Shown piece after piece: positions 6,920-64,000 of a DNA stretch of 64,000 nt. Numbering within the stretch: the first letter of the stretch is position 1; each line of letters begins with the position of its first letter. The notes below the pieces were generated by a model. That model saw only the letters and a program-made list of their open reading frames with translations, searched no databases and had not been told where the DNA came from. The stretch is from Mobula hypostoma (Eukaryota). The stretch covers positions 24,118,001 through 24,182,000 of the forward strand of contig NC_086109.1 of NCBI RefSeq assembly GCF_963921235.1, written 5' to 3'. A program made the translations under genes and the position numbers.

Positions 6920-7310
6920 TTTAGAGTTAGGAACGTAGAAGATTGAGAGGAGATTTGATGGAGGTATACAAAATTATGAGGGGTATAGATAGAATAAATC
7001 TATACTTATCTATATAAAAGGCTTTTTTTCCACTGAGGTTTGGTTGGGACTACAACCAGAGGGTTAAGGGTGAAAGGTGCAAAGTTTAAGGGGAACATGA
7101 GGGGCAACTTCTTCACTCAGAAGGTCATGAAAGTGTGGAATGAGCTGCCAGCACAAGTGGTGCATGCAAACTCAATTTTTCTGCTTAAGAGGAGTTTGGA
7201 TAGGTACATGGATGGTAGGGGCATGGAGGTCTATGGTCCCGGTGCAGGTTGATAGAAGTAGGAAGCTTAAATGGCTCAGCACTGACTTGATGGACCTGTT
7301 TCTGACTCTA
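6920..7310 (+). mobile_element. CR1 LINE 3' end
   Basis: RRLRGDLMEVYKIMRG..RGNFFTQKVMKVWNELP..LDRYMD. Confidence 0.85.
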
Positions 7311-7337
7311 TAACAATGTCTTCACTTTTTCTCAGTG

Positions 7338-7880
7338 GGCCAGGCAGCATCTACAGAAAAGAGTAAAGAGCCGATGTTTTGGACTGAGATCCTTCATCAG
7401 GACTGGTAAAAAAGATGAGTTCAGAGTCAGAAGGTGGGGAGAGGGGAGGAAGAATTACAAAGTGGTAGATGGTAGGTGAAACTGGGAGTGAGGGAGGAGG
7501 GGTGAATTAAAGAGTTGGGAAGTTGACTGGTGGAAGAGAAAAAAGGGCAGGAGAAGGGGGAGTCTGATAGGAGAGGATCACAGAGCGTGGAAAAAGAAGA
7601 GGAGGAGCACCAGAGGGAGGTGATGACAGGTGAGAGGAGGAAACAGGAATGGGAATGGTGCAGGAGTGTGGGGCGAGGCAAATGCTGGAAGTTCAAGAAA
7701 TTGATGTTCATTCCATCAACTTTAAAAAGTAACAGATAAATACTCTGTTAATAAAAGAGATCTGCAGATGCTGGAAATCCACAACACACAACAAAATGCT
7801 GGAGGAAATCAGCAAGTCAGGCATCATCTATGGAGGGGAATAAACAGTTGACTTTTTGGTCCGAGACCCTTCAATAGAAT
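7338..7880 (-). mobile_element. Penelope-like 3' fragments
   Basis: End of the GIY-YIG ORF (GMNINFLNF), UTR, degenerate hammerhead 7369-7405, and a second terminal repeat 7755-7875. Confidence 0.75.
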
Positions 7881-9560: not shown

Positions 9561-9950
9561 TGATAGAGGTGTATGAGATGATAAGACCAAGTGGACACCT
9601 CTTTTTTTCCCAGGGCAGCAATGGTAATACAAGAGGACATACTTTTATTTATTTAGTAATTTATTAAGATAAAGCACAGAATACTCCATTCTGGCTCTTT
9701 GAGCTGCGCCAACCAGCAACCCCCAATTTAACCCGAGCCTAGTCACGGGACAAATTACAATGAGCAGTTAACCTCCAAACTGGTACAGTGAGAGGAAATT
9801 GGAGACTGGAGGAAACTCGCATGGTCATAGGGAGAACGTACAAACTCCTTGCAGTGTTGGGGAATGATTCCAGATCACTGGTACTGTAACGCATTATGCT
9901 AACCACTAGGCTAGCATTCTGCATGTGTAAGATGACTGAAGGAAAGTTTA

Positions 9951-10171
9951 CACGGGGAATTCTGCAGATGCTGGAAATTCACGCAACACACATCAAAGTT
10001 GCTGGTGAACGCAGCAGGCCGGGCAGCATCTCTAGGAAGAGGTACAGTCCTTGTTTCGGGCCGAGATCCTTAGTCCTGACGAAGGGTCTCGGCCCGAAAT
10101 GTCGACTGTACCTCTTCCTATAGATGCTGCCCGGCCTGCTGCGTTCACCAGCAACTTTGATGTGTGTTGCG
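9951..10171. mobile_element. Fold-back (inverted) Penelope-terminal element with 14-bp target-site duplication
   Basis: Arms 9978-10071 and 10082-10175 are near-perfect reverse complements. Direct repeat tgaaggaaagttta at 9937-9950 and 10172-10185. Confidence 0.85.
10071..10108 (+). ncRNA. Minimal type I hammerhead ribozyme motif inside a fold-back element
   Basis: Identical to the 32153 copy (tagtcCTGACGAagggtctcggcccGAAAtGTCgactg). Predicted cleavage after C10103. Confidence 0.7.
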
Positions 10172-11939
10172 TGAAGGAAAGTTTATGTAGTTTTTCTTAC
10201 ACAGTGAGCGATAGGTGACGGAACATACTGCTGAGGGTGGTGGTAGAGGCCAATTTAAGAGGGATGTTTAAGAGCTTCTTAGATAGGAACATGGATGAAA
10301 TAAAAATAGAGGATTATTGTGTAGGAGGAAAAGGTTAGGTAGATCTTGCATTACTCTGAAAGGTCGGCACAACATCGTGGGCTGAAGGTCCCACACTGAG
10401 CTATACTGTTCTGTGTTCTCTGTTCTGTGACCTACTGAATACTTCCAGCATTTTTGCTTTTTTATTTCTGGTTTCTAGCATTCTGTTTTGATTTTCATTG
10501 GGAATCTTTGCTATTTTGCCATGACTGTAGCTTTCATATCTACACCTTTCTGGTCTTTAAACAAAGCCCTGGCTGTTTGACTAATACAGGTGTCCATTGA
10601 ACAACCTCCTCCTTTTGCCAGAACAGTTGACGCACAGGGTTCATTCCCCTGGTCACACAATAATAGCCACTTGCTACAGGCTCTTGGAGCCCCAAAACCA
10701 ACTTCCAATAACATCTATGCAGTTCAACCTATTGATTATAGAATGATAGATCAGTTCAATTCTGTACTACAAGCCAACCATTTTAAATGGATTGACCAGT
10801 ATACACACCTGGATATTAGGACCTAGCATTTCGAATTCAAACCAACAAAAGGCATTTCTCAACAATTTGGCACAATATCAGTGCAGAGAGCAACAAAAGC
10901 AGCAGGGAATATCCAATAGGTGGGCGTGAATCTTTAGTTTCAGTGGGCATCTCTTAGATTTTCATTAGTATTTTGCAAAATCAAATATTTTCAGTTATTA
11001 AAACACTCAAGAAACTCTCAATGAATCTAATTCAATAATAATAACAATTACTGGCTAGTTTAGTCTTTAACTTGATTATTTCGCTGTCAAAATATTAATT
11101 TCCTTTCAAGCAATTGTGAGCATTATATTTAACTACATTTCCAACCACAAATTTGCCCTTTGGCATTTTACCTTATTCTCATATCACTGGTCAGAGCACC
11201 CCAAAAACTAATGGAATTGGTCAACAATCTGCATAAGCAATTACAAAGATGGGAGCAGCATTTTTAAAAGAAATTACTGAGGATGAAAATTCTGCATCTA
11301 ATGCTGGCACATAGATTTATTGATGAAAAAAGTCATTTTTCATGTAGGTTTCAGCTCTTAATTGGATAAATCTTAAAATTTCATTTCCTACCCACAGTAT
11401 AGACTTACTATAAAGCAAAATACACACTGTCATTGAGTTATATCTATGCCTAACTTCTGAACACCTCTACATATAAATGACCTGCCATAATAACATGCAG
11501 TTTAAAAATCAGAAATACGTACAATACTATAAATGACAGAACTAGTTTCCTCTCTCCACTTTAAGTAAGTGTTTATTCTTATCACTCTTATGTGCTTTTG
11601 ATGCCATTCAGTACAATACTGTGGAGGTATGGTGACCATATTGTATGTTTTTTGTGCATTTTCTGAACTTAAGGACAAAATCAATTTACAGACATCTGGA
11701 AAAACTGGACTTACTTGTTTGTTGGGCATGGCCCGCAGAAGCAATGGCTTGAGCAAGGGCAGATACTCTGTACGGAACCCACAGCTTGCATCCCTACACG
11801 TCGGCCAGCAATAAGACGGCCTGGAAAGCTCACAAATTATTGAATAGGTGCTGGAAGTCAGAAACTGTTAGGCTATTGTTACAAACACAAAATATATTGG
11901 AAATATGTGACAGGTCCCATTAGGAATCCTCTAAAAGGA

Positions 11940-13857: not shown

Positions 13858-14460
13858 AACACAAACAAAACACTGGAGGAACTCAGCAGGTCAGGCAGCA
13901 TCTATGGAAAGGAATAAACAGTCAACATTTCAGGCCGAGACCTTTCATTAGGACTGGAAAGGAAGGGGAAAGAAGCCAGAAATAGGAGATTTGGTAGGAG
14001 GGAGGATGGCAGAGGGGAAGAAGTACAAGCTAGAAGGTAATAGATAAGCCAGTTGAAGGGGAAAGTTAGGTGGGAGAAGGAGATTGGGGGGATGAAGTGA
14101 GAAACTTGCAGGTGATAGGTGGAAAAGTAAAGGGCTGATGAAGAAGGAGTTTGATAGGATAGGAGAGTCGACCATGGGAGAAAGGGAAGGAGGAGGGCCA
14201 CCAGGGGGAGGTTAAAGGCGGGTGAGGAGAAAAAGAGGCTTGAACTAACTGTAAAGGTTCAAATATAACCCAATAAAACTGCACCAACTCCAATACGCAT
14301 AGAATTCATAGATGCAACAGATTCTGCAGATACCGGATATCTTGAGCAACACACATAAAATTCTGCAGAAACTCAGCATAAACATCAACAGTTTATTTCC
14401 CTCCATAGATGTTGCAAGACCTGCTGATTCCTCCACCATTTTGTTTGCGTTACCCCTAGA
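13858..14460 (-). mobile_element. Penelope-like terminal/UTR copy followed by a short fold-back copy
   Basis: ctggaggaactcagcaggtcaggcagcatc terminal motif; damaged hammerhead 13919-13956; inverted pair ~14320-14450. Confidence 0.75.
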
Positions 14461-23397: not shown

Positions 23398-23799
23398 CAA
23401 CACACAAAATGCTGGAGGAACCCAGCAGGTCAGGCAGCATCCATGAAAAAGGGTAAAGACTCAACGTTTCAGGCCGTAACATCCACTTTTACTCTTTTCC
23501 ATAGATGCTGCCTGAGCCGCCGTGTTCTTCCGTCATTTTATGTGTTTCTTTGAATTTCCAGCATCTGCAGATTATCTTATATTTATAAATACTCACATGA
23601 TGGATTTGATGTACATCGGAGATTTATAGTGGGTGAAATGCGCAACAGGTTGATGCATTAGTAAGCAAAAAAGAACAATGACTGGGTTCAGTATAGATTG
23701 AAACTGGAGTCTGTATATGTGGCTGATGCACTACAGGTTTTTCCCCTTCAGTCAGAACCTCAATTCTGCAAAGGCAATGATGAGACATGCTGTAATCCA

Positions 23800-25420
23800 C
23801 AATCAAAACTGCCCGTTCGAGGTCGTCATGAGGTGCAGAGGTTCGGACAGTTGGAGAGTAATCTGAGCGCCACTAAACAGCGGAGAAAGATAGAAACATC
23901 GTGACGATGGTCTGTAGTGGCAGAACATTCCAAAGAAACTAAAAGCACTAGGTACAAAAAAAGTCTTCGGAAGGGAACGGAGCGCAATCGATCCGTTCCG
24001 CCCGACTCCGACAGTAGCTGAAAACAGCCACGTGTCACAACTTTGTGTAGTTAATTTCCCCACGAAAGCCAAACCACGAACGGTTGACTCTCGAATCACT
24101 GCAGAGGGCAGTGTTTGGCCCGAAACAATAGTCTCTTTATAACACTTACACTGCCGACGTAGCGAGCTGTTGGGACTCAAATAAAAACTTACATTTAAGA
24201 AGAAAAAAGTTCAAACTTGATTGAGTGTGAGAGAGAGGCGAAAGCGACAAAAATGGCTAAGCAACAGGTACTCGGGGTGGGGGGGGGCTTTAACATTTTC
24301 CCCACATATAAACTTATGACATTTTAAAATACAAGTCAATAAAAGGCCGGAGGTCGACTCTCACACCCAGGCGAAGGACAATAGGAATCTGGGCTGCCAG
24401 TTTTGCCTTTTTATTAAATTTAGCGCTTGTTTTCTTTATAAATTTCAGTCTGTCGATTGGAACTCGCCGCGCCTTTCACGCATAACAGGGCTGCCTCGCT
24501 CCTGTCCTAATCTGCCCTTTCACGACGTCAACTAAAAATCTGATGGTCTTGCGGCAGACCCCTCCCGACATCTACATGGCACCCTTAACAAAACTTGCAG
24601 AAAAACCGCAGAGAGAGAGTTAGAGATAGAGAGCGAGAGTGAGAGAGAGAGAGAGAGAGTGAGAGAGAGAGAGAGAGAGAGGGAAGAGAGAGGGAGGGAG
24701 GGGAAGAGAGGGGGAGGGAGGGGAAGAGAGAGGGAGGAAGGGGGAAGAGGGAGGGAAGGGGAAGAGGGAGGGAGGGGGAAGAGAGAGGGAGGGGGAAGAG
24801 GGAGGGGNNNNNNNNNNNNNNNNNNNNNNNNNNNNNNNNNNNNNNNNNNNNNNNNNNNNNNNNNNNNNNNNNNNNNNNNNNNNNNNNNNNNNNNNNNNNN
24901 NNNNNNNNNNNNNNNNNNNNNNNNNNNNNNNNNNNNNNNNNNNNNNNNNNNNNNNNNNNNNGAGAGAGGGAGGGGAAGAGAGAAGGAGGGAGGGGAAGAG
25001 AGAGGGGAGGGAGGGGGAGGAGAGAGACAGACAGAAAAGGATGAGTGAGTAGATGTTTTCTCTCTGTAGCATGAAAAAGTAGGCAATATGGAAGGCACTA
25101 CTGTGGGGAGTTGGGATGGATGCAAACATGCATTTCACGTGAAGCTCGATGAGTACACTAGGAACAGAAGGGTACGTCGAGGAAGATGTATATAAAGAGA
25201 GTCATGGGGCAAAGTCAATTAGTGCAAGTGCAAAAGGAAAGCAGACCCTGGAGCCAAGCAATTATGATTGAGTTGGTAACAACCTCGCCTTTTGCTTCAG
25301 AAGATGGTGCGCTCAGTTTCCATTCCCGTGATAAACAATACAAAAATCTCGACGACTGAGGCTCGGAGCACTGCGTGTCGGAGCCGCTGAGGGATATATA
25401 AAATGGAAGCTCTTTCCAAT
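23800..25420 (-). promoter_or_regulatory. CpG-enriched intronic island, candidate internal promoter with non-coding first exon
   Basis: Local CpG excess in unique sequence; CRE-like GACGTCA 24524-24530; ATTGG ~24456-24460; CACGTG ~25136-25141; long GA/CT tract; strong minus-strand donor AAAT|gtaagt with last exon base 24193. Confidence 0.55.
24609..25040 (+). repeat. GA/polypurine tract containing a 154-nt assembly gap (24808-24961)
   Basis: (GA)n and GGGGAAGAGAG-type units seen directly; run of N. Confidence 0.95.
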
Positions 25421-26319: not shown

Positions 26320-27130
26320 ACAAACACGAGAAAAGTCTGCAGATGCTGGAAATCCAAAGCAATGCTCACAAAATGCTAAAGGGACTGAGCAGGTCAGGCA
26401 GTCTCTATGGCAATGAACAAACAGTCCATGTTTCAGACTGAGACCTTCTTCAGGACTGGAGAGGAAGGGGGGAAGACGTTCGGAAGAAAAAGGTGAAGGA
26501 GGTGGAAGGAGGCTATCTTGAAGGTGATATGTGAAGTCAGGTGGGTGGGAAAGATAAAGGGCTGGAGAGGAAGGAAGGAGAGTGGACCACAGGAGAAAGG
26601 AGCCCTGGGTGGAGTGATAGGCAGATGAGAAGAGGTAGGAGGCCAGAGTAGAAAACAGGAGAGTAGAAAAGGGGGAGGGAAATGTTTTTTTACTGGACGG
26701 AGAAGTCGATATTCATGCCATCAGGTTGGATGGTAGCCAGATGGAATATAAGATGTTTCTCCTCCATCCTGAGTGTGGCCTCATCTTGGCACAAGAGGAG
26801 GCCATGGACTGACATGTGGGAATTAGGAATGGAGTTGGAATTAAAATGCTTAGCCATCAGGAAGTTCTGCTTTTGGCGGAGGGAGCGGAGGTGCTTGGTG
26901 AAGTGGTCCCCCAATTTATGATGGGTCTCGCTAATGCAGAGGAGGCCGCATCGGGAGCACCGGACTCAATACTAGATTTGCAGGTGAATTGCTGCATCAG
27001 CTGGAAGGACTGCTAGGGGCCCTGAATGGAGGTGAGGGAGGAGGTGAATGGGCAGGTGTGACACGTTGGCCACTTGCAGGGACATGTGCCGGGAGGGAGA
27101 TTAATGGCAAGGTATGAATATACATGGGAA
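26320..27130 (-). mobile_element. Penelope-like retroelement 3' fragment with degenerate GIY-YIG endonuclease and terminal repeat
   Basis: ORF 26690-26914 (GDHFTKHLRS..MAKHFNS..EEKHLIFHLATIQPDGMNIDF) is a typical Penelope GIY-YIG C-terminus. A Cys-rich linker lies upstream and a damaged hammerhead at 26422-26458. Confidence 0.85.
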
Positions 27131-31348: not shown

Positions 31349-31862
31349 CATAGAAACATAGAAATCTACAGCATTTTACCAACCCTTCGGTCCATAATGT
31401 TGTGCTGATCATGTAACCTTCTTTAGAAACTGCCTAGAATTTCCCTACCGCATAGCCCTCTATTTTTCTAAGCTCCGTGTACCTATCTAAGAGTCTCTTA
31501 AAAGACCCTATTGTATCTGCCTCTACCACCTTCACTGGCAGTGCAATCCATTTCTCTGTGTGAAAATCTTACCTCTGACATTCCTCTTGTACCCACTTCC
31601 AAGCAGCTTAAAACTATGCCCCCTTGTCAGCCATTTCAATCCTGGGAAAAAGCCTCTGACTATCCACACGATCAATGTCTCTCATCATCTTATACACCTC
31701 TATCAGGTCATCCCTCTTCCTCTGTCGCTCAAACTATTCTCATAAGGCATGCTCTCCAATCCAGGCAACATCCTCGTAAGTCTCCTCTACACTCTCTCTA
31801 TAGTATCCACATCCTTCCTGTAATGAGGTGACCAGAATTGAACACAGTACTCCAAGTGGGGT
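31349..31862 (-). mobile_element. CR1 LINE 3' end, same subfamily as 8326-8745
   Basis: High similarity to 8326-8745; catagaaacatagaaa tail. Confidence 0.85.
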
Positions 31863-31952
31863 CATATATCTTATAGGATCAATATCATTCATCTCTTCAC
31901 AACATGTTAACAGCTTCAAACCAGTAACATCTCAATATTTCCTAGTGAAGAC

Positions 31953-32287
31953 ATGCCCGCCCATCCTCTGGGCTTCCCCCCTCCCCTTGTTCTTTCTCCC
32001 TAGGCCTCCTGTCCCATGATCCTCTCATATCCCTTTTGCCAATCACCTGTCCAGCTCTTGGCTCCATCCCTCCCCCTCCTGTCTTCTCCTATCATTTTGG
32101 ATCTCCCCCTCCCCCTCCCACTTTCAAATCTCTTCCTAGCTCTTCTTTCAGTTAGTCCTGACGAAGGGTCTCGGCCCGAAATGTCGACTGTCCTTCTTCC
32201 TAGAGATGCTGCCTGGCCTGCTGCGTTCACCAGCAACTTTTATGTGTGTTGTTTGAAATTCCAGCATCTGCAGATTTCCTCGTGTTT
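31953..32287 (+). mobile_element. Penelope-like 3' UTR/terminal repeat, young copy
   Basis: Pyrimidine-rich UTR, hammerhead, then the gatgctgcctggcctgctgcgttcaccagc..ccagcatctgcag tail shared with the 26.3-27.1 kb element. Confidence 0.8.
32153..32190 (+). ncRNA. Minimal type I hammerhead ribozyme motif (Penelope-associated)
   Basis: tagtc-CTGACGA-a-ggg tctcgg ccc-GAAAT-GTC-gactg: 5-bp stem I and intact core, with U-G replacing C-G in stem III. Predicted cleavage after C32185. Confidence 0.7.
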
Positions 32288-37591: not shown

Positions 37592-38555
37592 CCTCAGCCT
37601 TGAACTTATTGATTGCTGCAATCACATATTTAATTGGGTGTGTGAGGTTATAGCCCACGCTTTTGATTAAATCAGTTTTAGTATCCATTTTATCCCACCC
37701 TTTGTTCTGTGCATTCCTGAGGACTGTTTCTGTTATGCTGTCCCTGACTCTGCTCTGTGACCTTGCGAGTATGTTGCTGGGAGCTTCAATTGGACCAATA
37801 ATGTGCTGAAATTTTAAAAGTTCATTTTTATTTCTCAAAAATGAAATAATTATATCAAAACTGTCATTAATTTTGCTGCCAAATTGCTCACACAAATCCT
37901 CAGAAGGTTAACAAAACAGTACTGGGTGGAGAGCTGCACCTGTCCAAACACAACTAATATTCTGGCAGCTGCCAGAGGTGCTGGCCTACTGTGGAGTATC
38001 AGGTTCACTCCATGTCTTTATGGGGGGGGGCAACAGAGAAGGGGGCACGCGTTGGGATGTAGAGGATGCAAGGGAGAGAGAAGCAGAAAATGAGGGAAAG
38101 GGAATACAAAAATAGCAAGGGTAGCAGGAAGACAGAGGCAGACAGCCAGAAATGGAACAGGGAGAGAGAAACACATGCACAGAAAGGGAGGCAGACACGC
38201 ATAAAAAGACAGACAAATACTGAGAAATGAGACCGGGAAAGGCAGAGAAAGAGCAAAGTTCTGTTTTCATAGTGAGCGCAGTAATTTGACAGAGTGGAGC
38301 GTAGGAATCATCCTACTTGCATTTAATTGATTTACACTGAATGAAAATCAGGCAATCCACTTTTCTAAGTTACTGCCCATGTGGTTTAAATGAAAATTTA
38401 TCTCGGAGTGAGAAGCAATTGGGAGAGACAGACAGCCCAGTGGAGCATGGGGGTGGGGGAGGGGGAGAAAATAAGGGAGCGAAAGGGAGGATGGGAGAAA
38501 TGGAGATAGAGCCAAAGTTGAAAAATGGAAGTAAAAGGTGACAAATTTAAAATAA

Positions 38556-38679
38556 GATGTCCTGACGAAGGGTCTCGGCCTGAAACGTCGACTGCACCTC
38601 TTCCTAGAGATGCTGCGTTCACCAGCAACTTTGATGTGTGTTGCTTGAATTTCCAGCATCTGCAGAATTCCTGTTGTTT
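38556..38679 (+). mobile_element. 124-bp Penelope-terminal insertion (hammerhead plus 3' end) with 13-bp TSD
   Basis: aaatttaaaataa at 38543-38555 and 38680-38692. Body closely matches 32155-32287. Confidence 0.85.
38559..38592 (+). ncRNA. Minimal type I hammerhead ribozyme motif (Penelope-associated) with canonical core
   Basis: gtc-CTGACGA-agg gtctcgg cct-GAAAC-GTC-gac: stem I gtc/gac, full conserved core, stem II, loop-less palindromic stem III (ACGT). Predicted cleavage after C38589. Confidence 0.75.
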
Positions 38680-40269
38680 AAATTTAAAATAAACTCATCT
38701 GTGGCATTGCTGGCGATTAATGTCACTGGCACTTTCTGCGTACCACTTCCCAGTCTAACACTGGAAAGATCATGAACTAAAATACTGAGATCTATAAGGG
38801 GGATTTGGACAGCTGATTAAAAGCTGAGTCAGAATATTCTGAAGAAAAAGGAGTGAGAGGTAGAGAGAATTGGGAGAGAATATCATGCAGCAGAATGCAC
38901 ATCCACCAGTATTGACGTCGGAAGACTGAGGAATCACAAGAACAGGATAGGAGTCTTTAATATATTAAAGGCACCACTTAAGTGCAAGTTGTTGTCATTG
39001 TTGGAATATTTAATTGGCAGAAGTTCATTTCAGTACTGAGGTCATTGAGTCGCAGCATCATACGCTTGGCCTATTGTTGATCACTTTGCCACTCTCTGTG
39101 AATCCCATTTGCTCAGATTGGGTCTGTACTTTATTCAAGATGGTGGAGCTTTCAGATGCAGTGACCATTTCATTTCTGGCCGTAACCATCTTTGCCTTGC
39201 TCATGAAGCACCAATTTTAACGCCTCTTAAACAAAGTGATTGTATTAGATTCTATCTCTTCTGTAACCTTGTGATCTTAGACAACGTTCCTCACCACCAC
39301 GCTTTTTGCCACCTGCAAGCTTACTAATCATACATTTCAATCCTATTTGTTAACTTATATCATAAACAACAAAGGTACCAACATTGATATCTGTAGCCCA
39401 TTTTTATGAGATGAGTGGTTTGAACATGAACTGTGTAATCTGAATGGGGTGTTAGTTAATTCATGGGAAATGCTTCTCCCCAGTTATTCAAGTAAAATAA
39501 ATGGGAATTGAACCATATTAGATTGCTTGCGAGAATGTGGCAAGTGGGCATGTGGCCAATTTGCACGGTAAATTGACTAGGCCTCCTATGCGCAGAGGGC
39601 ACCCTCTTATGGCTCGGGCCATTGACTGCAGGGTGGGCCCAGATCATCACCCCCACTGTACATTGCCCAACATGTACTGTATCTAACATAACTCAGTAAA
39701 AACATTTAGTCATATTACTCCATTGTCCTATTGCTCTGCGCGCAAGTAACAAGAATGAAAACAGTCTTTAAGCACAGATGACTAGATTTCATACAATGTC
39801 TTCCTGTCCTCCGCACTCATACTCCTCAATGAAGGTCTAACCTTTTAATGACGGGACATGATTCTGAAATTAAATTTAATCAAACTCACCAAAGCCTGTA
39901 CCCTCAGCTAACACACAACTCTACACAGAACAAGGATAGGATAAGACGCACCCAGGAACACTCATGAAGAGGGGTCTGAAGTACACCAGTACTAATCAGG
40001 GAATGTTGTTAGATTCATAAATTTGCTTAAAATGTAGTCCATTTCAGAAGTTCCAAGAGTTGGGAACTATCAATGAGAGGAAGAGGAGAATCTATGCGGG
40101 ATTCTGTCACTATTCAAGGAGCAAGTGTAAGGTAGCTAGTGAATAATGGAAAAATAGTCTGCGCTGAATATCTCGTCTGCAGATGGGATAATGGTGTTCT
40201 GCACTTTTACTAACTTGCTGTCCCTTTTAGTAGGAGACATTTTGCAGAAGCGTCTTAACCTCCTTATTT

Positions 40270-45697: not shown

Positions 45698-46875
45698 GAG
45701 TCATAGAGAAGTATAGCACAGAAAAAGGCAGTTCTGCCCATCTAGTCCATTTAAACTCCCATTGACCAGCACAGTGCCATAGCCCTCCATACCTCTACCA
45801 TCCGTATAACCATATAAACTTCTCTTACATGTTGAAATCGAGCTCTCATGCACCATTAATGTCACATTCTCATGACTCTCTGAGTGAAGAAGTTTCTCCT
45901 CAAGTTCCCCTTAGCCATTTCACCTTTCACCCTTAACCCGTGGCCTCTGGCTGTAGTTCCACCCAACCTCAGTGGAAAAAGCCTGCTTGCATTTACCCTG
46001 TCTATACTCCTCATAATTCTGTATACCTTTATCAAATTTTCTCTCAAACTTCTAAGTTCTAAAGAATACTGTCATAACCTATTCAATCTTTCCTTATAAC
46101 TCAGGTCCTCCAGACCCAGCAAAATCTTTGCAAATTTTCTCTGTACTCCTTCAACCTTGTTTACATCTTTCCCGTACGTAGGTGACAAAACTACATGCAA
46201 TACTCCAAATTAGGCCTCACCAACGCCCTGTACAAATTCAACATAGCATATCATCTCCTGTACTCAATACATTGATTTATGAAGGCCAGTGTGCCGAAAG
46301 CTTTCTTTACAATCCTATCTACCTGTGAGGCCACTTTCAACAAATGATGGACCTGTATCCCCAGAATCTACCATACTCTTCAGTGCCCTACCATTCACTG
46401 TGTAAGACCTACCTTGGTTGGTCCTACCAAAGTGCAAAACATCACACTTGTCTGCATTACATTCCATCTGCCATTTTTCCAGCTGATGCAGATCTCTATG
46501 CAAGCCATGATAGCCTTCCTCACTGTCCACTACACGCCCAATCTTGGTGACATCTTCAAATTTGCTGATCCAGTTAACTACATTATCATCCAGATCACTG
46601 ATATAGATGACAAACAACAAAGGATCCAGCACCAATCCCTGTGGCAGACCAGTAGTCACAGGCCTCCAGTCAGAGAGACAGTCATATACTACCACTCTCT
46701 GGCTTCTCTCACAAAGCCAATGTCTAACCCAATGTACTATCTCAACCTGAATACTGAGCGACTGAACCATCTTGACCAGTCTCCCATGCGGTGCCATGTC
46801 AAATGCCTTGCTAAAGTCCATGTAGACAACATCCACCTCCTTGCCTTCATCCACTTTCCCTTCATCCACTTTCCC
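45698..46875 (-). mobile_element. CR1 LINE RT fragment plus 3' end
   Basis: ORF 46315-46869 (VDVVYMDFSKAFD..GLPQGLVLDPLLFVIYISDLD..WQMECNADKC) and ORF 45862-46047. Confidence 0.92.
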
Positions 46876-47940
46876 GGTAACTTTCCTAGATTTGCAAAAC
46901 CAGTTCTAACAATTAGAAAGGCTTACCAGGTTGGGATAATTTTCTTGAGAAAAGAGATAGTCAAAGGACAATCAATTAAGGACCTTTAAAGATATGTAAG
47001 TAGAGATGATAATTCCATGTGTAGGAGTTCAAATCTAGAGATCATAAATGCAAGGTAGTAACAAGCAAGGAGAAGTTGAAGCAAAGAACACAGATGCTTT
47101 GAAGAGAAAGTTGAATAATTACTAGTAAAAAACGAAGATTGTTTGAGATAATGTGGGAGGACACTATTGTGAAGCTTACTGAATAGAACTAACCAGTTCT
47201 GCCTCTTATTTGCTTTTGTGCTTAAAGTTTCATGTAGCTTTAGTGGAAGATTCAGACCCGTAAGTAGACTTATGCATGTAAGTCAAAGCCCGCCCCACAT
47301 CACTGGACCCCCTTCAGCATCGTTCCAGAGATTCACCTCATCCATTAGCTTTAAAGAAAAGATTTGTGAAAGGAGGAGATAATTCCTGCAGTGGGCAGTG
47401 TGTAGAGTGAAAGCCAGTGGCACACTTAAAACTGCTTGCTCCGCCAGGATTTATCTGGAGGAATACTAGAGTGTGGGTCTGCTGCACGATGTACAAACAC
47501 AGCAGCATGACAACAGAGCATTTATCAGTAGCTACAATACTTGGCCTGTCAAATCACTCAGCCAGTTGGTAATGGCTACATGTTATAATCATTGTCAGTA
47601 AAAGCACCTTGATCTCAAATAAAGAATAAAGACTTGGACTAATTTGGTGTCTTTCATAAATTTCATACATCTCAAAGTCCTTTACAGCCAATGAAGGAGT
47701 TTAAAAATTTTAAAAACTTTGTAACATAGCCAGATGTCACATGTTCCCCGCAAACAGTAACACGAGAGATTCTGCAGGTAATGCAAATCCAGAGCAGGAC
47801 ATCACAAAATGTCCGAGGAACTCAGGAAATCAAACAGCATTTATGGAGGGAAATAAAGAGTCAATGTTTTTGGACTAAGATGTGGCCCGACTTGCAGAGT
47901 TCTTCCAGCATTTTGTGTGTGTCCCATGAACAGTAACACG

Positions 47941-53839: not shown

Positions 53840-54035
53840 AACATGAGAAAATATGCAGATGCTGGAAATCCAAAACCAACACACACAAAATGCTGGAGGA
53901 ACTCAGCAGGTCAGGCAGCATCTATGAGTTTTGAGTAAACAGTCAATGTTTCGGGCCGAGACCCTTCATCAGGTCCTGTCCTGAAGGAGGGTCTTGGCCT
54001 GAAATGCCAACTGTTTACTCTTTTCCATACACATT
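53840..54035. mobile_element. Penelope-terminal fold-back with two back-to-back degenerate hammerhead motifs
   Basis: Minus copy 53940-53975 (CTGATGA..GAAAC ATT) abuts plus copy 53978-54013 (CTGAAGG..GAAAT GCC). Confidence 0.75.
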
Positions 54036-57839: not shown

Positions 57840-59060
57840 CCCCACTGAAAAAGCAAAAAAAAATAGCAAGTTTGAACCACCCCCGTCCTACTATGGGGGA
57901 ATTTACATTAAAAGTAATGTTTTGGCATACTTAGATAAAAAGATAATTCAATTCTGGTGAAACACATTGCAGATTTATGAAAAGGCTGGATTGTGTCAAA
58001 CCAGAAGTTGATATTTTTGCAAGAAGAATTAAAAAAATTCTTCTACTTTAGACAAACAAGAGAGATAGTGTTTCCTTAACAGCCGAGCCTTTTCAAATGC
58101 TAACTCCAATTGCTGCTCTCTCAAGATGAAAACCATCTGTCTCATAAGTGCACTTTACTCTCACTGCGCAATAAAACCCCACAACCTGCCTGCCGTCTGT
58201 GATTGACTCTCAACGGCGATTTCACTTCAATGCCACATTGCCAACAAAAAATGTTTCTTTTTTTTTCTTTAAACAGGCGCAGCTACAGAAGTTTGGTCTC
58301 AGTGCCAACATAAGCAGGGAGCCCAACAAGGAGTGCGAGACTAGGACTATGACTCGAAAGCCTCTTCCTCTTTGAAAAGAGAAAGCTATTCATTTTTCCC
58401 CTCTGCTCAAACAAAATAACCATTGTTGTCCTGTGACTCTGACAGGTTTTATTAGGTCTGAGTTCTGGCTTGAAAGAGAGAGAGAGGGAGAGAGGGAGAA
58501 GGAGGGAGAGATAGATAGAGAGAGAGGGGGGGGTTTGGAGAGAGAAAAAGAAAGGGGAAGGGAGAGGGAGAGGGAGAAAGAAGGGGAGAGAAAAAGAGAG
58601 GGAGGGAGAGAGGGATAGAAAGAGAGAGAGAGGGAAAGAGGAAGCGAGGGAGAGAGGGACAGAAATTGAGGGAGAGAGAAAAAGAGAGAGGGAGAGATGG
58701 AGAAAGACAGGGAGAGAGGGACAGAAAGATAGAGGAAGATTGAGCAATGGGGGGGAGAGAGAGAGAGAGCGCGCGTAGTGTATGTGTGTGTGTTGGGGTA
58801 GTGTACAGGGAGAGAGGGGTCACCAGAGTGAAACTAAGCCTCTAAGTCTGGCACTACAGCTGACAGCATGCTTTTGGTCCTTTGTAACGTCAATAACCAG
58901 GGGTGTAAATATGAAGTGGGAATCAGAATAGATTAGCCAAGATATTGCTGCCCCTCTGCGATTAAAAAAAACTTCTCCGTAGACAGCTTTCCATCTAATT
59001 CTAGACCTTCGCTTAAAATTCTCCGACCTCTTGTGATTTGTAGTTCTTCCTGTTTCTGTA
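57840..59060 (-). promoter_or_regulatory. Candidate second internal promoter or conserved non-coding block
   Basis: Transposon-free sequence with retained CpGs (gcgcgcg ~58769), a GA/CT tract, ACGTCA 58887-58892 and a possible donor CTAA|gtatgc near 57930. Same layout as the 24-25 kb island. Confidence 0.4.
58472..58770 (+). repeat. GA/polypurine tract
   Basis: Seen directly. Confidence 0.95.
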
Positions 59061-63100: not shown

Positions 63101-64000
63101 AAGGATGTTAGAGCATAGAACATAGAACATTATAGCACAGTACAGGCCCCCTTTGGCCCACGATGTTGTGCCGACTTTTTAAACTACTCTAAGATCAATC
63201 TAACACTTCCCTCTTACAAAGCTCTCCATTTTTCTCTCATCCATGTGCCTATGTAAGATTTTCTTAAATGTCCCTAAAGTATCCTCTTCTTCCACCGTCC
63301 CTAGCACGGTATTTCACCCTGAAGGGTTTCAGCCTGAAACGTCGACTGTTTACTCTTTTCCATAGATGCTGCCTGGCCTGCTGAGTTCCTCCAGCATTTT
63401 GTGTATGTTACTTTGATTTCCAGCATCTGCAGATTCTCTTGTCTGCTCCTTGATTCGATTGGCTTAAATTTTAGGAGAGTTCTTGTGCAACACTCAGTCA
63501 AATGCGATCTTGATGTTAAGAGCAGTCATTCTAATTTTATTTAAGGAACTTGGTGCTTTTGCCTATCCTTGGACCAAAGTTTGGGCCAAGTGATCCATCT
63601 AGTGAAAACTAAAACTGATCCTTACTGAACAGATTATTGAGGAGTAAATGCTGCTTGTTAGCACAGCAGGCAACATCTTCCATCTCTTCACTGATTAACA
63701 AGAACAATGTGACTGATTTTAACAGACCACTTGGTCTTTGCTAGGTGGCAAGATTAGTGTCCTCCAAAATTTTAGAGTGAAAGAGAAAGCACAAGACATG
63801 GAGATGGAGAAACGTAGTAATGAAGTATGTATCCAACTGTGGAAATAGCAACACACTCAAAATACTGGAGCAACTCAGCAGGTCAGGCAGCATTCGTGGA
63901 AAAGAATAAACAGTTGGTGATTCGGACCGAGACCCTTCACCAGGACTGACAAGGTAGTGGGAAGATGCCAGACTAAAAAGGTAGGGGGTGGGGAAGGAAG

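What the first reader, a model, noticed from the sequence alone, without database searches (positions are those of the whole stretch)
38543..38692. Ribozyme-only mobile unit: 124-bp insertion made of a minimal hammerhead plus Penelope 3' end, with a perfect 13-bp TSD
Seen: aaatttaaaataa flanks a 124-bp insert that starts 6 nt before CTGACGA and has the full hammerhead core gtc-CUGACGA-agg(gucucgg)ccu-GAAAC-GUC-gac. Established: Penelope-like elements carry minimal type I hammerheads whose palindromic stem III works through dimers, and hammerhead-bearing non-autonomous retroelements (retrozymes) exist. Inference: this ubiquitous repeat in the genome is a hammerhead-bearing family, and this copy is a recent, non-coding retroposed unit. 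It could be a SINE-like or retrozyme-like family, or an extreme 5' truncation.
Basis: partly seen in the sequence, partly recalled or inferred. Interest (0 to 1): 0.85.

Follow-up and report, generated by a model that had tools for sequence, protein, structure and literature searches.

The report
Solo Penelope terminal repeat with hammerhead
This 124-base insert is a real, recent jump of only the short terminal repeat of a Penelope-like retrotransposon, hammerhead motif included; it is a by-product of a known element, not a new ribozyme-only mobile family.

Summary
A 124-bp insert (38556-38679) lies between two perfect copies of AAATTTAAAATAA. Contigs of three related organisms carry the exact empty site with one copy of the 13-mer, so it is a lineage-specific retro-insertion.

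The insert has every core base of a minimal type I hammerhead. It keeps only 3 of the family's 5 helix I pairs and has a G-U at 10.1-11.1. Rfam does not recognise it.

It is not a separate family. Longer copies in the window run upstream through about 330 nt of C/T-rich 3' UTR into a GIY-YIG endonuclease C-terminus, so the family is the 3' end of a Penelope-like element (PLE).

The 5' end is not a random truncation. At least four other insertion events in this window start within 2 nt of the same base. The window also shows two alternative 3' ends 36 nt apart (the PLE "tail") and head-to-head pairs with the tail on one arm only.

The best reading is a solo pseudo-LTR. The PLE reverse transcriptase starts at its internal entry site and runs off the 5' end of the RNA, and the copy is probably dead on arrival.

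This is a new member of a known kind. First-stage readers flagged the same pattern in other windows of this genome.

The parts
38543..38555 (+). Left copy of the 13-bp target-site duplication AAATTTAAAATAA
   Evidence: Present once in the empty sites of organisms B, D and F.
38556..38558 (+). GAT: three bases that match neither the family consensus (CCA at this place) nor the target. Filler, or a very short snap-back.
   Evidence: side-by-side comparison with long copies.
38559..38592 (+). Minimal type I hammerhead motif. Helix I 5' strand GTC 38559-61; CUGACGA 38562-68; unpaired A 38569; helix II GGGU-CUCG-GCCU 38570-81 (G10.1-U11.1 wobble); GAAA 38582-85; C15.2-G16.2 38586-87; U16.1 38588; C17 38589 (predicted cut after it); helix I 3' strand GAC 38590-92.
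   Evidence: Features compared with the PLE min-HHR description in PMC4209133. No Rfam hit.
38593..38643 (+). Body of the pseudo-LTR up to the place where tail-less copies end (the proximal RT start site). It carries a 12-bp deletion relative to relatives, somewhere within 38611-38616, between GCTGC repeats.
   Evidence: Loose ends behind 32251 mark the matching proximal 3' end in the long copy.
38644..38679 (+). 36-nt 'tail' ending at the distal, canonical 3' end of the family (...CTGCAGAATTCCTGTTGTTT). No poly(A).
   Evidence: The tail of 30-40 bp is described in PMC8557442, PMC3846280 and PMC11167929.
38680..38692 (+). Right copy of the 13-bp target-site duplication
31853..32287 (+). Long copy of the same subfamily. 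It has C/T-rich 3' UTR, then the same hammerhead (32155-32190), body and tail, and shows that the 124-mer is the end of a longer element.
26328..26965 (-). Long copy of the sister subfamily reaching into the GIY-YIG endonuclease C-terminus (26693-26965), followed by 3' UTR, hammerhead and tail.
   Evidence: Atlas look-alikes are GIY-YIG clusters, score 0.95. Pfam found nothing.
9951..10171 (.). Head-to-head pair of the same unit with a 14-bp TSD (TGAAGGAAAGTTTA). Both arms meet at the unit's first bases. The minus arm has the tail and the plus arm ends near the proximal site.
7267..7877 (-). Partial tandem: a complete short unit (7877-7755) starting at the same first base, followed by a 5'-truncated longer copy (7748-7267).

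Best explanation
The insert is a solo pseudo-LTR of an endonuclease-bearing Penelope-like element. It was made in one step by target-primed reverse transcription. The PLE endonuclease made nicks staggered by 13 bp in an A/T-rich target. The reverse transcriptase began at its internal entry site on a PLE transcript, here the distal of two start sites, so the copy carries the 36-nt tail. It then copied about 120 nt and ran off the 5' end of the RNA, which lies at the first base of hammerhead helix I (family position A459/G460). Three unmatched bases (GAT) closed the 5' junction. The hammerhead is carried along because it forms the first 35 nt of the pseudo-LTR; nothing suggests it caused this insertion. 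The copy has no ORF and lacks whatever lies 3' of the RT entry site in the RNA. Its helix I is shortened and helix II weakened, so it is most likely an inert by-product. Shown: the insertion, the TSD, membership of the PLE 3' end, the recurrent 5' and 3' end points, and the one-arm tail rule. Inferred: that the fixed 5' end is the RNA's 5' end (probably the transcription start), and that the copy is immobile and non-cleaving.
For: 1. Empty site. Contigs of organisms B, D and F skip exactly 137 bases with 13 ambiguous letters.

2. PLE identity. Six long copies continue upstream of the hammerhead through C/T-rich sequence. One reaches a reading frame ending ...CSRCGLLCISET...EEKHLIFHLATIQPDGMNIDFS*, whose nearest Atlas clusters are GIY-YIG.

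3. Fixed 5' end. The ref, the plus arm at 10070, both arms at 53973/53978, the unit at 7873 and the copy at 825 all start at A459/G460 within 2 nt, with unrelated sequence upstream. No copy ends between model positions 170 and 457. Four of 11 other short events fall within 2 nt of the ref's end, binomial p=0.005. In contigs of A, B and F, 3' ends are joined directly to that same first base (joints 32286->32154, 32248->32154, 32257->32156).

4. Two 3' ends 36 nt apart. Copies end either at ...CTCGTGTTT or at ...GTGTGTTG(C). In one search, 447 contigs diverge into random A/T-rich flank behind 32251.

5. Tail on one arm. In 4 of 4 resolvable inverted pairs one arm has the tail and the other does not.

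6. Agreement with published PLE biology. Reverse transcription starts internally at two adjacent sites that define the tail, both DNA strands are cut and extended, the target is A/T-rich, and HHR mutants still insert (PMC11167929). Pseudo-LTRs have fixed length, with an adjacent inverted pLTR, a 31-bp tail on one of them, a palindrome at the pLTR 5' end, an Inr-like motif and solo pLTRs (PMC3846280). min-HHRs are mostly single dispersed motifs from truncated PLEs, with some pairs on opposite strands (PMC4209133).

7. No PLE sequence in the flanks.
Against: - The genome-wide test was inconclusive. Only Logan contigs were available. Summed contig depth shows no sharp step at the hammerhead start in DNA (1.2-2.5 fold), so most copies by that crude measure extend upstream. 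The share of solo units could not be measured.
- The sample of end points comes from one 64-kb window (about 19 events).
- The RNA 5' end was never observed. The only RNA-like run shows a 5.8-fold excess of the unit over the upstream UTR against 1.2-fold in DNA of the same organism, but its RNA label is a guess and the tool warns that this depth is a poor measure.
- A full-length insertion later reduced by pLTR-pLTR recombination would leave the same solo unit and TSD.
- No full-length element with both pseudo-LTRs is in the window, so the 137-bp pLTR is defined indirectly.
Confidence: 0.7

Rival explanations
1. Ordinary random 5' truncation of a PLE copy. The reverse transcriptase simply fell off 121 nt from its start, and the coincidence with the hammerhead edge means nothing.
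For: PLEs show a high degree of 5' truncation (PMC8557442). The window also holds copies truncated at model positions 473-526 and 81-166. Contig depth in DNA shows no large step at the hammerhead start.
Against: Four or more other independent events in the same window end within 2 nt of the same base (p=0.005). None end in the 290 nt upstream of it. 3' ends are joined to exactly that base in contigs of three organisms. First-stage notes from other windows report the same clustering (unverified).
Confidence: 0.1
2. Solo pseudo-LTR left by recombination. A longer pLTR-body-pLTR element inserted here, and unequal recombination between its two 137-bp repeats then removed the body, as happens with solo LTRs.
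For: It would leave the same TSD and the same fixed 5' end. Solo pLTRs ascribed to recombination or deletion are reported in Adineta vaga (PMC3846280). A pLTR-body-pLTR copy exists in the window at 7267-7877.
Against: - The insertion is young: it is absent from an organism only about 1.5% diverged.
- The repeats are short.
- Most PLE copies here have only the 3' repeat.
- Hairpin-like pairs made of pLTRs alone with their own TSDs (9951-10171 and 47765-47928) cannot arise that way and show that pLTR-only insertion happens.
- The in vitro PLE reaction makes just such short products.
Confidence: 0.1
3. A true non-autonomous mini-element (retrozyme-like or SINE-like). The 137-nt unit is its own transcription unit, mobilised in trans by PLE enzymes, with the hammerhead processing tandem transcripts.
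For: - The consensus around the first base, CCAGTCC, fits the initiator pattern YYANWYY with A459 as +1 (sequence; my reading).
- D. virilis Penelope has a TATA-less internal promoter with Inr (PMC2377424), and A. vaga pLTRs have Inr-like motifs.
- Tandem joints of period about 133 occur in contigs of three organisms.
- The unit is over-represented in the RNA-like run.
- Non-LTR retrozymes are proposed to be PLE pLTR derivatives with dispersed monomers (bioRxiv 10.64898/2026.07.22.740005).
Against: - At this locus there is one unit, not a tandem.
- In the Anolis PLE the RNA must extend about 55 nt beyond the RT start site to be used, and an inserted unit lacks that part.
- No distinct diagnostic sequence separates short units from the ends of long copies.
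- No Pol III-type head was found; Rfam found no tRNA, 7SL or 5S.
- Transcription start and cleavage are untested.
Confidence: 0.1

Closest known systems
Pseudo-LTR (pLTR) of endonuclease-containing Penelope-like elements, including solo and inverted pLTRs (Arkhipova et al. 2013, PMC3846280; Craig et al. 2021, PMC8557442)
   Same: A short terminal unit of fixed length, with an optional 30-40-bp tail present at one end only. An inverted 5' copy abuts head-to-head at a short palindrome. Partial tandems and short TSDs occur, and there is no poly(A). The hammerhead lies inside the unit.
   Different: The unit here is shorter (about 137 bp with tail, about 101 without) than the 181-218 bp of Adineta vaga. 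TSDs are 12-14 bp here against 8-10 bp there. This solo unit has a perfect TSD and a documented empty site, which shows de novo insertion of the pLTR alone.
Minimal type I hammerheads of PLEs (Cervera & de la Pena 2014, PMC4209133)
   Same: CUGANGA and GAAA boxes, an unpaired base between 9 and 10.1, G10.1-C11.1 in the family consensus, a palindromic ACGU in place of helix III (implying dimers), and a helix I of 4-5 bp. The motifs are thousands of mostly single dispersed copies, some paired on opposite strands.
   Different: This copy has a 3-bp helix I and G10.1-U11.1. Helix II is 4 bp with a tetraloop rather than the 6-8 bp reported for several families. Activity is untested.
In vitro insertion products of the Anolis Poseidon element PAc (Frangieh et al. 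2024, PMC11167929)
   Same: Reverse transcription starts internally, roughly 70-105 nt 3' of the hammerhead cut site, at two neighbouring sites. cDNA runs to the 5' end of a short RNA. Targets are A/T-rich and both strands can be extended. Hammerhead cleavage is not needed.
   Different: Those are test-tube products of another clade in a lizard, whereas this is a fixed genomic copy. In PAc the ORF start overlaps the hammerhead; here no ORF start could be placed in the unit.
Non-LTR retrozymes of animals (Li, Clavereau & Pollet 2026 preprint, 10.64898/2026.07.22.740005)
   Same: Short non-coding, hammerhead-bearing units related to PLE pLTRs. Dispersed monomers are regarded as dead-end offspring.
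   Different: Retrozymes are defined by tandem arrays that yield circular RNA. This locus is a single unit, and the tandem joints seen in contigs were not examined further.

Membership tests
Penelope-like element (EN+ PLE) copy | The family encodes RT fused to a C-terminal GIY-YIG endonuclease | tested here: inconclusive
   Long copies run into a decayed frame with a CGLL-ISET...LIFHL...QPDGMN C-terminus. Atlas look-alikes are GIY-YIG clusters, score 0.95, but Pfam gives no hit. No PLE RT is linked to a copy in this window.
Penelope-like element (EN+ PLE) copy | Optional 30-40-bp tail, present at only one end of inverted units; two adjacent 3' end points | tested here: met
   3' ends lie 36 nt apart. 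In 4 of 4 resolvable inverted pairs the tail is on one arm only.
Penelope-like element (EN+ PLE) copy | Head-to-head inverted 5'-truncated copies and partial tandems | tested here: met
   Five inverted pairs and one partial tandem lie in 64 kb. Two pairs are flanked by TSDs of 14 and 12 bp.
Penelope-like element (EN+ PLE) copy | Hammerhead motif inside the terminal repeat | tested here: met
Penelope-like element (EN+ PLE) copy | Insertion with a short TSD, no poly(A), A/T-rich target | tested here: met
   The TSD is 13 bp and the empty site is documented. 3' flanks of other copies in the contigs are A/T-rich.
Minimal type I hammerhead (PLE min-HHR) | Core C3-A9 (CUGANGA), G12-A14, A15.1-U16.1 and H17 | tested here: met
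   All are present in the ref.
Minimal type I hammerhead (PLE min-HHR) | Unpaired base between 9 and 10.1; G10.1-C11.1; palindromic 15.2-16.2 | tested here: inconclusive
   The unpaired A and C15.2-G16.2 are present. 10.1-11.1 is G-U in the ref and G-C in the family consensus.
Minimal type I hammerhead (PLE min-HHR) | Helix I of 4-5 bp | tested here: not met
   The ref has 3 contiguous pairs because the copy starts inside the 5' strand. Long copies have 5.
Minimal type I hammerhead (PLE min-HHR) | Covariation in helices I and II | tested here: inconclusive
   In 11 decaying copies, 3 pairs have one double change each, and 17-34 of 500 shuffles reach the observed values.
Minimal type I hammerhead (PLE min-HHR) | Self-cleavage after C17, as a dimer or with protein | not testable with these tools
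   Folding shows helices I and II in the 45-nt segment but not in the 124-nt MFE. No Rfam hit.
Non-LTR retrozyme | Tandem repeats of a hammerhead-bearing unit | tested here: not met
   There is a single unit at this locus and no hammerhead tandem in the window. Tandem joints exist elsewhere in contigs.
SINE | Pol III head derived from tRNA, 7SL or 5S | tested here: not met
   The Rfam gathering search of the whole window found nothing. The local E<=10 search gave only chance snoRNA matches.

The most novel reading that the evidence does not exclude
The 137-nt pseudo-LTR is a self-contained unit. Its first bases (CCAGTCC) would act as an initiator, so every transcript begins with the hammerhead. 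PLE enzymes would copy such unit-length RNAs in trans. The short palindromes of the hammerhead (GTC..GAC, GGCC, ACGT/GTCGAC) would then be the places where two like-stranded cDNAs pair to give the head-to-head inserts. In that case the ribozyme region doubles as core promoter and as a joining site, and the solo units are a genuine mini-retroelement rather than debris.
Probability: 0.15. Interest if true: 0.65.

Novelty: new member of a known kind. Interest (0 to 1): 0.35.

Why it matters
It gives a clean natural example of a Penelope-like element inserting nothing but its terminal repeat, with a perfect TSD and the empty site preserved in three relatives. Its end points match what the 2024 in vitro work predicts: an internal RT start, two start sites, and a tail on one arm. 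The sharp common 5' end at the first base of the hammerhead suggests where PLE RNAs begin. That makes the long-unclear role of the PLE hammerhead more testable. For annotation, it warns that the many short hammerhead hits in this genome are PLE pseudo-LTRs, not a new ribozyme family.

Tried and rejected
- **Rfam.** No hammerhead hit at gathering score on the window or at E<=10 on the locus. This is expected for helix III-less motifs and is not taken as evidence against the motif.
- **Pfam on the endonuclease fragment.** No hit. The RVT_1 fragment at 46315-46869 was not linked to this family.
- **Genome-wide 5'-end census by laying reads on the long copy.** Only contigs were available. Loose ends at 32154 mix true ends with alignment breaks, because this copy differs from the consensus just upstream. 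Depth is dominated by subfamily breakpoints, so no usable fraction came out.
- **Splice-acceptor reading of ...CCTTTCCAG|TCC**, by analogy with the D. virilis intron that ends at helix I. Rejected because short copies keep A459/G460, share no upstream exon sequence, and no recurrent spliced joint appeared.
- **Hammerhead cleavage as the source of the 5' end.** Rejected because the cut is after position 490, 31 nt inside the unit, and only one copy (5090-5022) starts near there.
- **An older antisense PLE copy in the G/A-rich left flank.** No homology.
- **Thermodynamic folding and cofolding and covariation.** Neither supports nor refutes catalysis.
- **An ORF start inside the unit.** An open frame from the ATG in CATAGATGCTG exists in the sister subfamily but is stopped in the ref's subfamily, so no claim is made.
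Full report
**Observation**

The window reads AAATTTAAAATAA at 38543-38555 and again at 38680-38692. The neighbouring bases differ, so the repeat is exactly 13 bp and encloses 124 bp, 38556-38679.

The insert starts GATGTC, followed by:
- CTGACGA
- A
- GGGTCTCGGCCT
- GAAA
- CG
- TC
- GAC

These are all the core bases of a type I hammerhead without helix III.

Rfam's hammerhead models do not see it, either at gathering score over the window or at E<=10 over the locus. That is expected for the helix III-less PLE motifs, which were found with RNAMotif descriptors (PMC4209133).

The family motif occurs 11 times in the window against 0.05 expected.

**The insertion is real and young**

I laid contigs of four runs from other organisms on 37800-39400. 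They gave a joint 38542->38680 that skips 137 bases, with 13 letters fitting either side. It appears in organism B (one 3125-nt contig, 22 differences over about 1460 flanking bases), organism D and organism F (a 4117-nt contig). This is the empty target with one copy of the 13-mer.

Organism E had no bridging contig.

The flanks carry no PLE homology.

**What family it is**

BLAST and an nhmmer model built from window copies find 26 pieces of the repeat in 64 kb.

Six copies continue upstream of the hammerhead through about 330 nt of C/T-rich sequence. The copy at 26328-26965 (minus strand) reaches a decayed frame...VRCSRCGLLCISETHHKLGDHF...EEKHLIFHLATIQPDGMNIDFSVQ*, that stops there. Pfam finds nothing in these 91 residues. 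Their nearest ESM Atlas clusters are eukaryotic GIY-YIG proteins, score 0.95 with 197 shared features.

Together with the structural hallmarks below, this identifies the 3' end of an endonuclease-bearing Penelope-like element. The clade was not resolved.

The ref is 91-94% identical to three same-subfamily copies: 31853-32287 and the two arms at 9951-10171. It lacks 12 bp between GCTGC repeats.

The family is enormous in all organisms tested, with 11,000-151,000 contigs laid.

**The ends are not random**

In model coordinates the hammerhead box CTGATGA is 463-469, the cut is after 490, and the canonical 3' end is about 596.

*5' ends.*
- Sharp 5' ends at A459/G460, with unrelated sequence upstream, are seen in the ref, the plus arm at 10070, both arms at 53973/53978, the unit at 7873 and the copy at 825.
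- The copy at 63320 is ambiguous.
- Seven other short events end between 473 and 526.
- Three long ones end at 81-166, and the rest run beyond the model or the window.
- None end between 170 and 457.
- Taking the ref's end as the prior hypothesis, 4 of 11 other short events within 2 nt gives p=0.005.
- Contigs of organisms A, B and F contain joints in which a 3' end (32286, 32248 or 32257) is followed directly by 32154-32156, the same first base.

*3' ends.* Copies stop either at ...CTCGTGTTT or about 36 nt earlier at ...GTGTGTTG(C). In one search, 447 contigs of organism A diverge into random A/T-rich flank behind 32251, the proximal site.

*Inverted pairs.* Five head-to-head pairs occur in the window. 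Two have their own TSDs, 14 bp at 9937/10172 and 12 bp at 47753/47929. In all four resolvable pairs one arm carries the 36-nt tail and the other ends at the proximal site. The junctions fall on short palindromes of the hammerhead region: GTC-CT-GAC at 10070-10080 and GGCC at 23466-23476.

**Comparison with what is known**

Each of these features is already described for PLEs.

- High 5' truncation, partial tandems forming pseudo-LTRs, an inverted 5'-truncated copy abutting the 5' end, and a 30-40-bp tail at one end only (PMC8557442).
- In Adineta vaga: pLTRs of fixed length (181-218 bp), an inverted pLTR overlapping the direct one at a palindrome, a 31-bp tail on one of the inverted pLTRs, Inr-like motifs in the pLTR, solo pLTRs, TSDs of 8-10 bp and an empty-site proof (PMC3846280).
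- In the Anolis element PAc, in vitro: cutting and extension of both strands, A/T-rich targets, reverse transcription starting internally at two adjacent sites that delimit the tail about 85-92 nt 3' of the hammerhead cut, cDNA running to the 5' end of short template RNAs, and no need for hammerhead cleavage (PMC11167929).
- Cervera and de la Pena reported that PLE min-HHRs are mostly single, dispersed motifs 'probably related to truncated PLEs', with some pairs on opposite strands. They listed an unpaired base after A9, G10.1-C11.1, a palindromic 15.2-16.2 and a 4-5-bp helix I as recurring traits.

The family consensus here shows all of these traits.

**Most likely mechanism**

The 124-mer is the pseudo-LTR alone: hammerhead (35 nt), RT-entry body (about 50 nt) and tail (36 nt).

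The simplest route has four steps:
1. Nicks staggered by 13 bp in the target.
2. Priming at the distal RT start site of a PLE RNA.
3. Synthesis to the RNA's 5' end at A459/G460.
4. Three filler bases at the junction.

[quoted passage not shown] The consensus CCAGTCC fits the initiator pattern with A459 as +1. This is my reading and has not been tested. Penelope of D. virilis has a TATA-less, Inr-type internal promoter in its repeat (PMC2377424).

One weak hint comes from a run guessed to be RNA. There the unit is 5.8 times better represented than the upstream UTR, against 1.2 times in DNA of the same organism. The tool warns against reading depth this way.

Hammerhead cleavage cannot set the 5' end, because the cut lies 31 nt inside the unit.

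The ref is the only copy in the window that keeps a complete core with ACGU. However, its helix I is 3 bp and its 10.1-11.1 pair is G-U. Monomeric min-HHRs were inactive in vitro. The inserted unit also lacks the RNA segment 3' of the RT start that PAc requires. I therefore expect this copy neither to cleave nor to move again.

**Rivals**

- Random truncation, about 0.1. The clustering argues against it.
- Recombination between the two repeats of a full insertion, about 0.1. It cannot be excluded at this locus, but it is unnecessary, since pLTR-only hairpin inserts with TSDs exist.
- A genuine non-autonomous mini-element, about 0.1. It is supported only by the Inr-like motif, the tandem joints of period about 133 and the RNA-like depth.

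**What stayed open**

- The genome-wide share of solo units could not be measured. Only contigs were available, and DNA depth shows at most a 1.2-2.5-fold step at the hammerhead start.
- Covariation in 11 decaying copies is weak.
- Folding is uninformative.

**Earlier notes from this scan**

First-stage readers flagged the same pattern in other windows of this genome: breakpoints clustering on the hammerhead, asymmetric tail-out palindromes and 13-16-bp TSDs. I used these only as leads and checked the pattern in this window.

**Verdict**

This is a new member of a known kind, and a tidy natural counterpart of the in vitro PLE product. Interest is 0.35.

Noticed in passing
window 9937-10185: A head-to-head pair of the same unit is flanked by a 14-bp TSD (TGAAGGAAAGTTTA). 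The arms meet at GTC-CT-GAC. The minus arm has the 36-nt tail, and the plus arm stops 6 nt past the proximal site. Arm differences are mostly at CpG.
   Followed up: partly
window 47753-47940: A second inverted pair has a 12-bp TSD (AACAGTAACACG). Its junction is inside the unit (model 481|510), so the 5' part of the hammerhead is missing. The tail is on the minus arm only.
   Followed up: partly
contigs of organisms D, E, F laid on window 38559-38594 (table 5c): Direct 'goes back' joints run from 38592 or 38594 to 38559 with an A between. These are tandem repeats of the bare hammerhead with a period of about 35-37 nt. None is present in this window.
   Followed up: no
window 31724-31867: A different, very high-copy repeat lies just upstream of the long PLE copy. 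It has sharp boundaries at 31806 and 31863 in all organisms laid. It was not identified.
   Followed up: no
window 46315-46869 (-): An ORF fragment carries a reverse-transcriptase domain (RVT_1, E=5.8e-11). Whether it is a PLE or a LINE was not determined.
   Followed up: no
window 24610-24806 and 58472-58734: Long G/A-rich imperfect microsatellite tracts (AGAG/GAGG units).
   Followed up: no
window 23400-23579 and 14315-14453: Two more head-to-head pairs without detectable TSDs. The first joins at the GGCC palindrome of helix II.
   Followed up: partly
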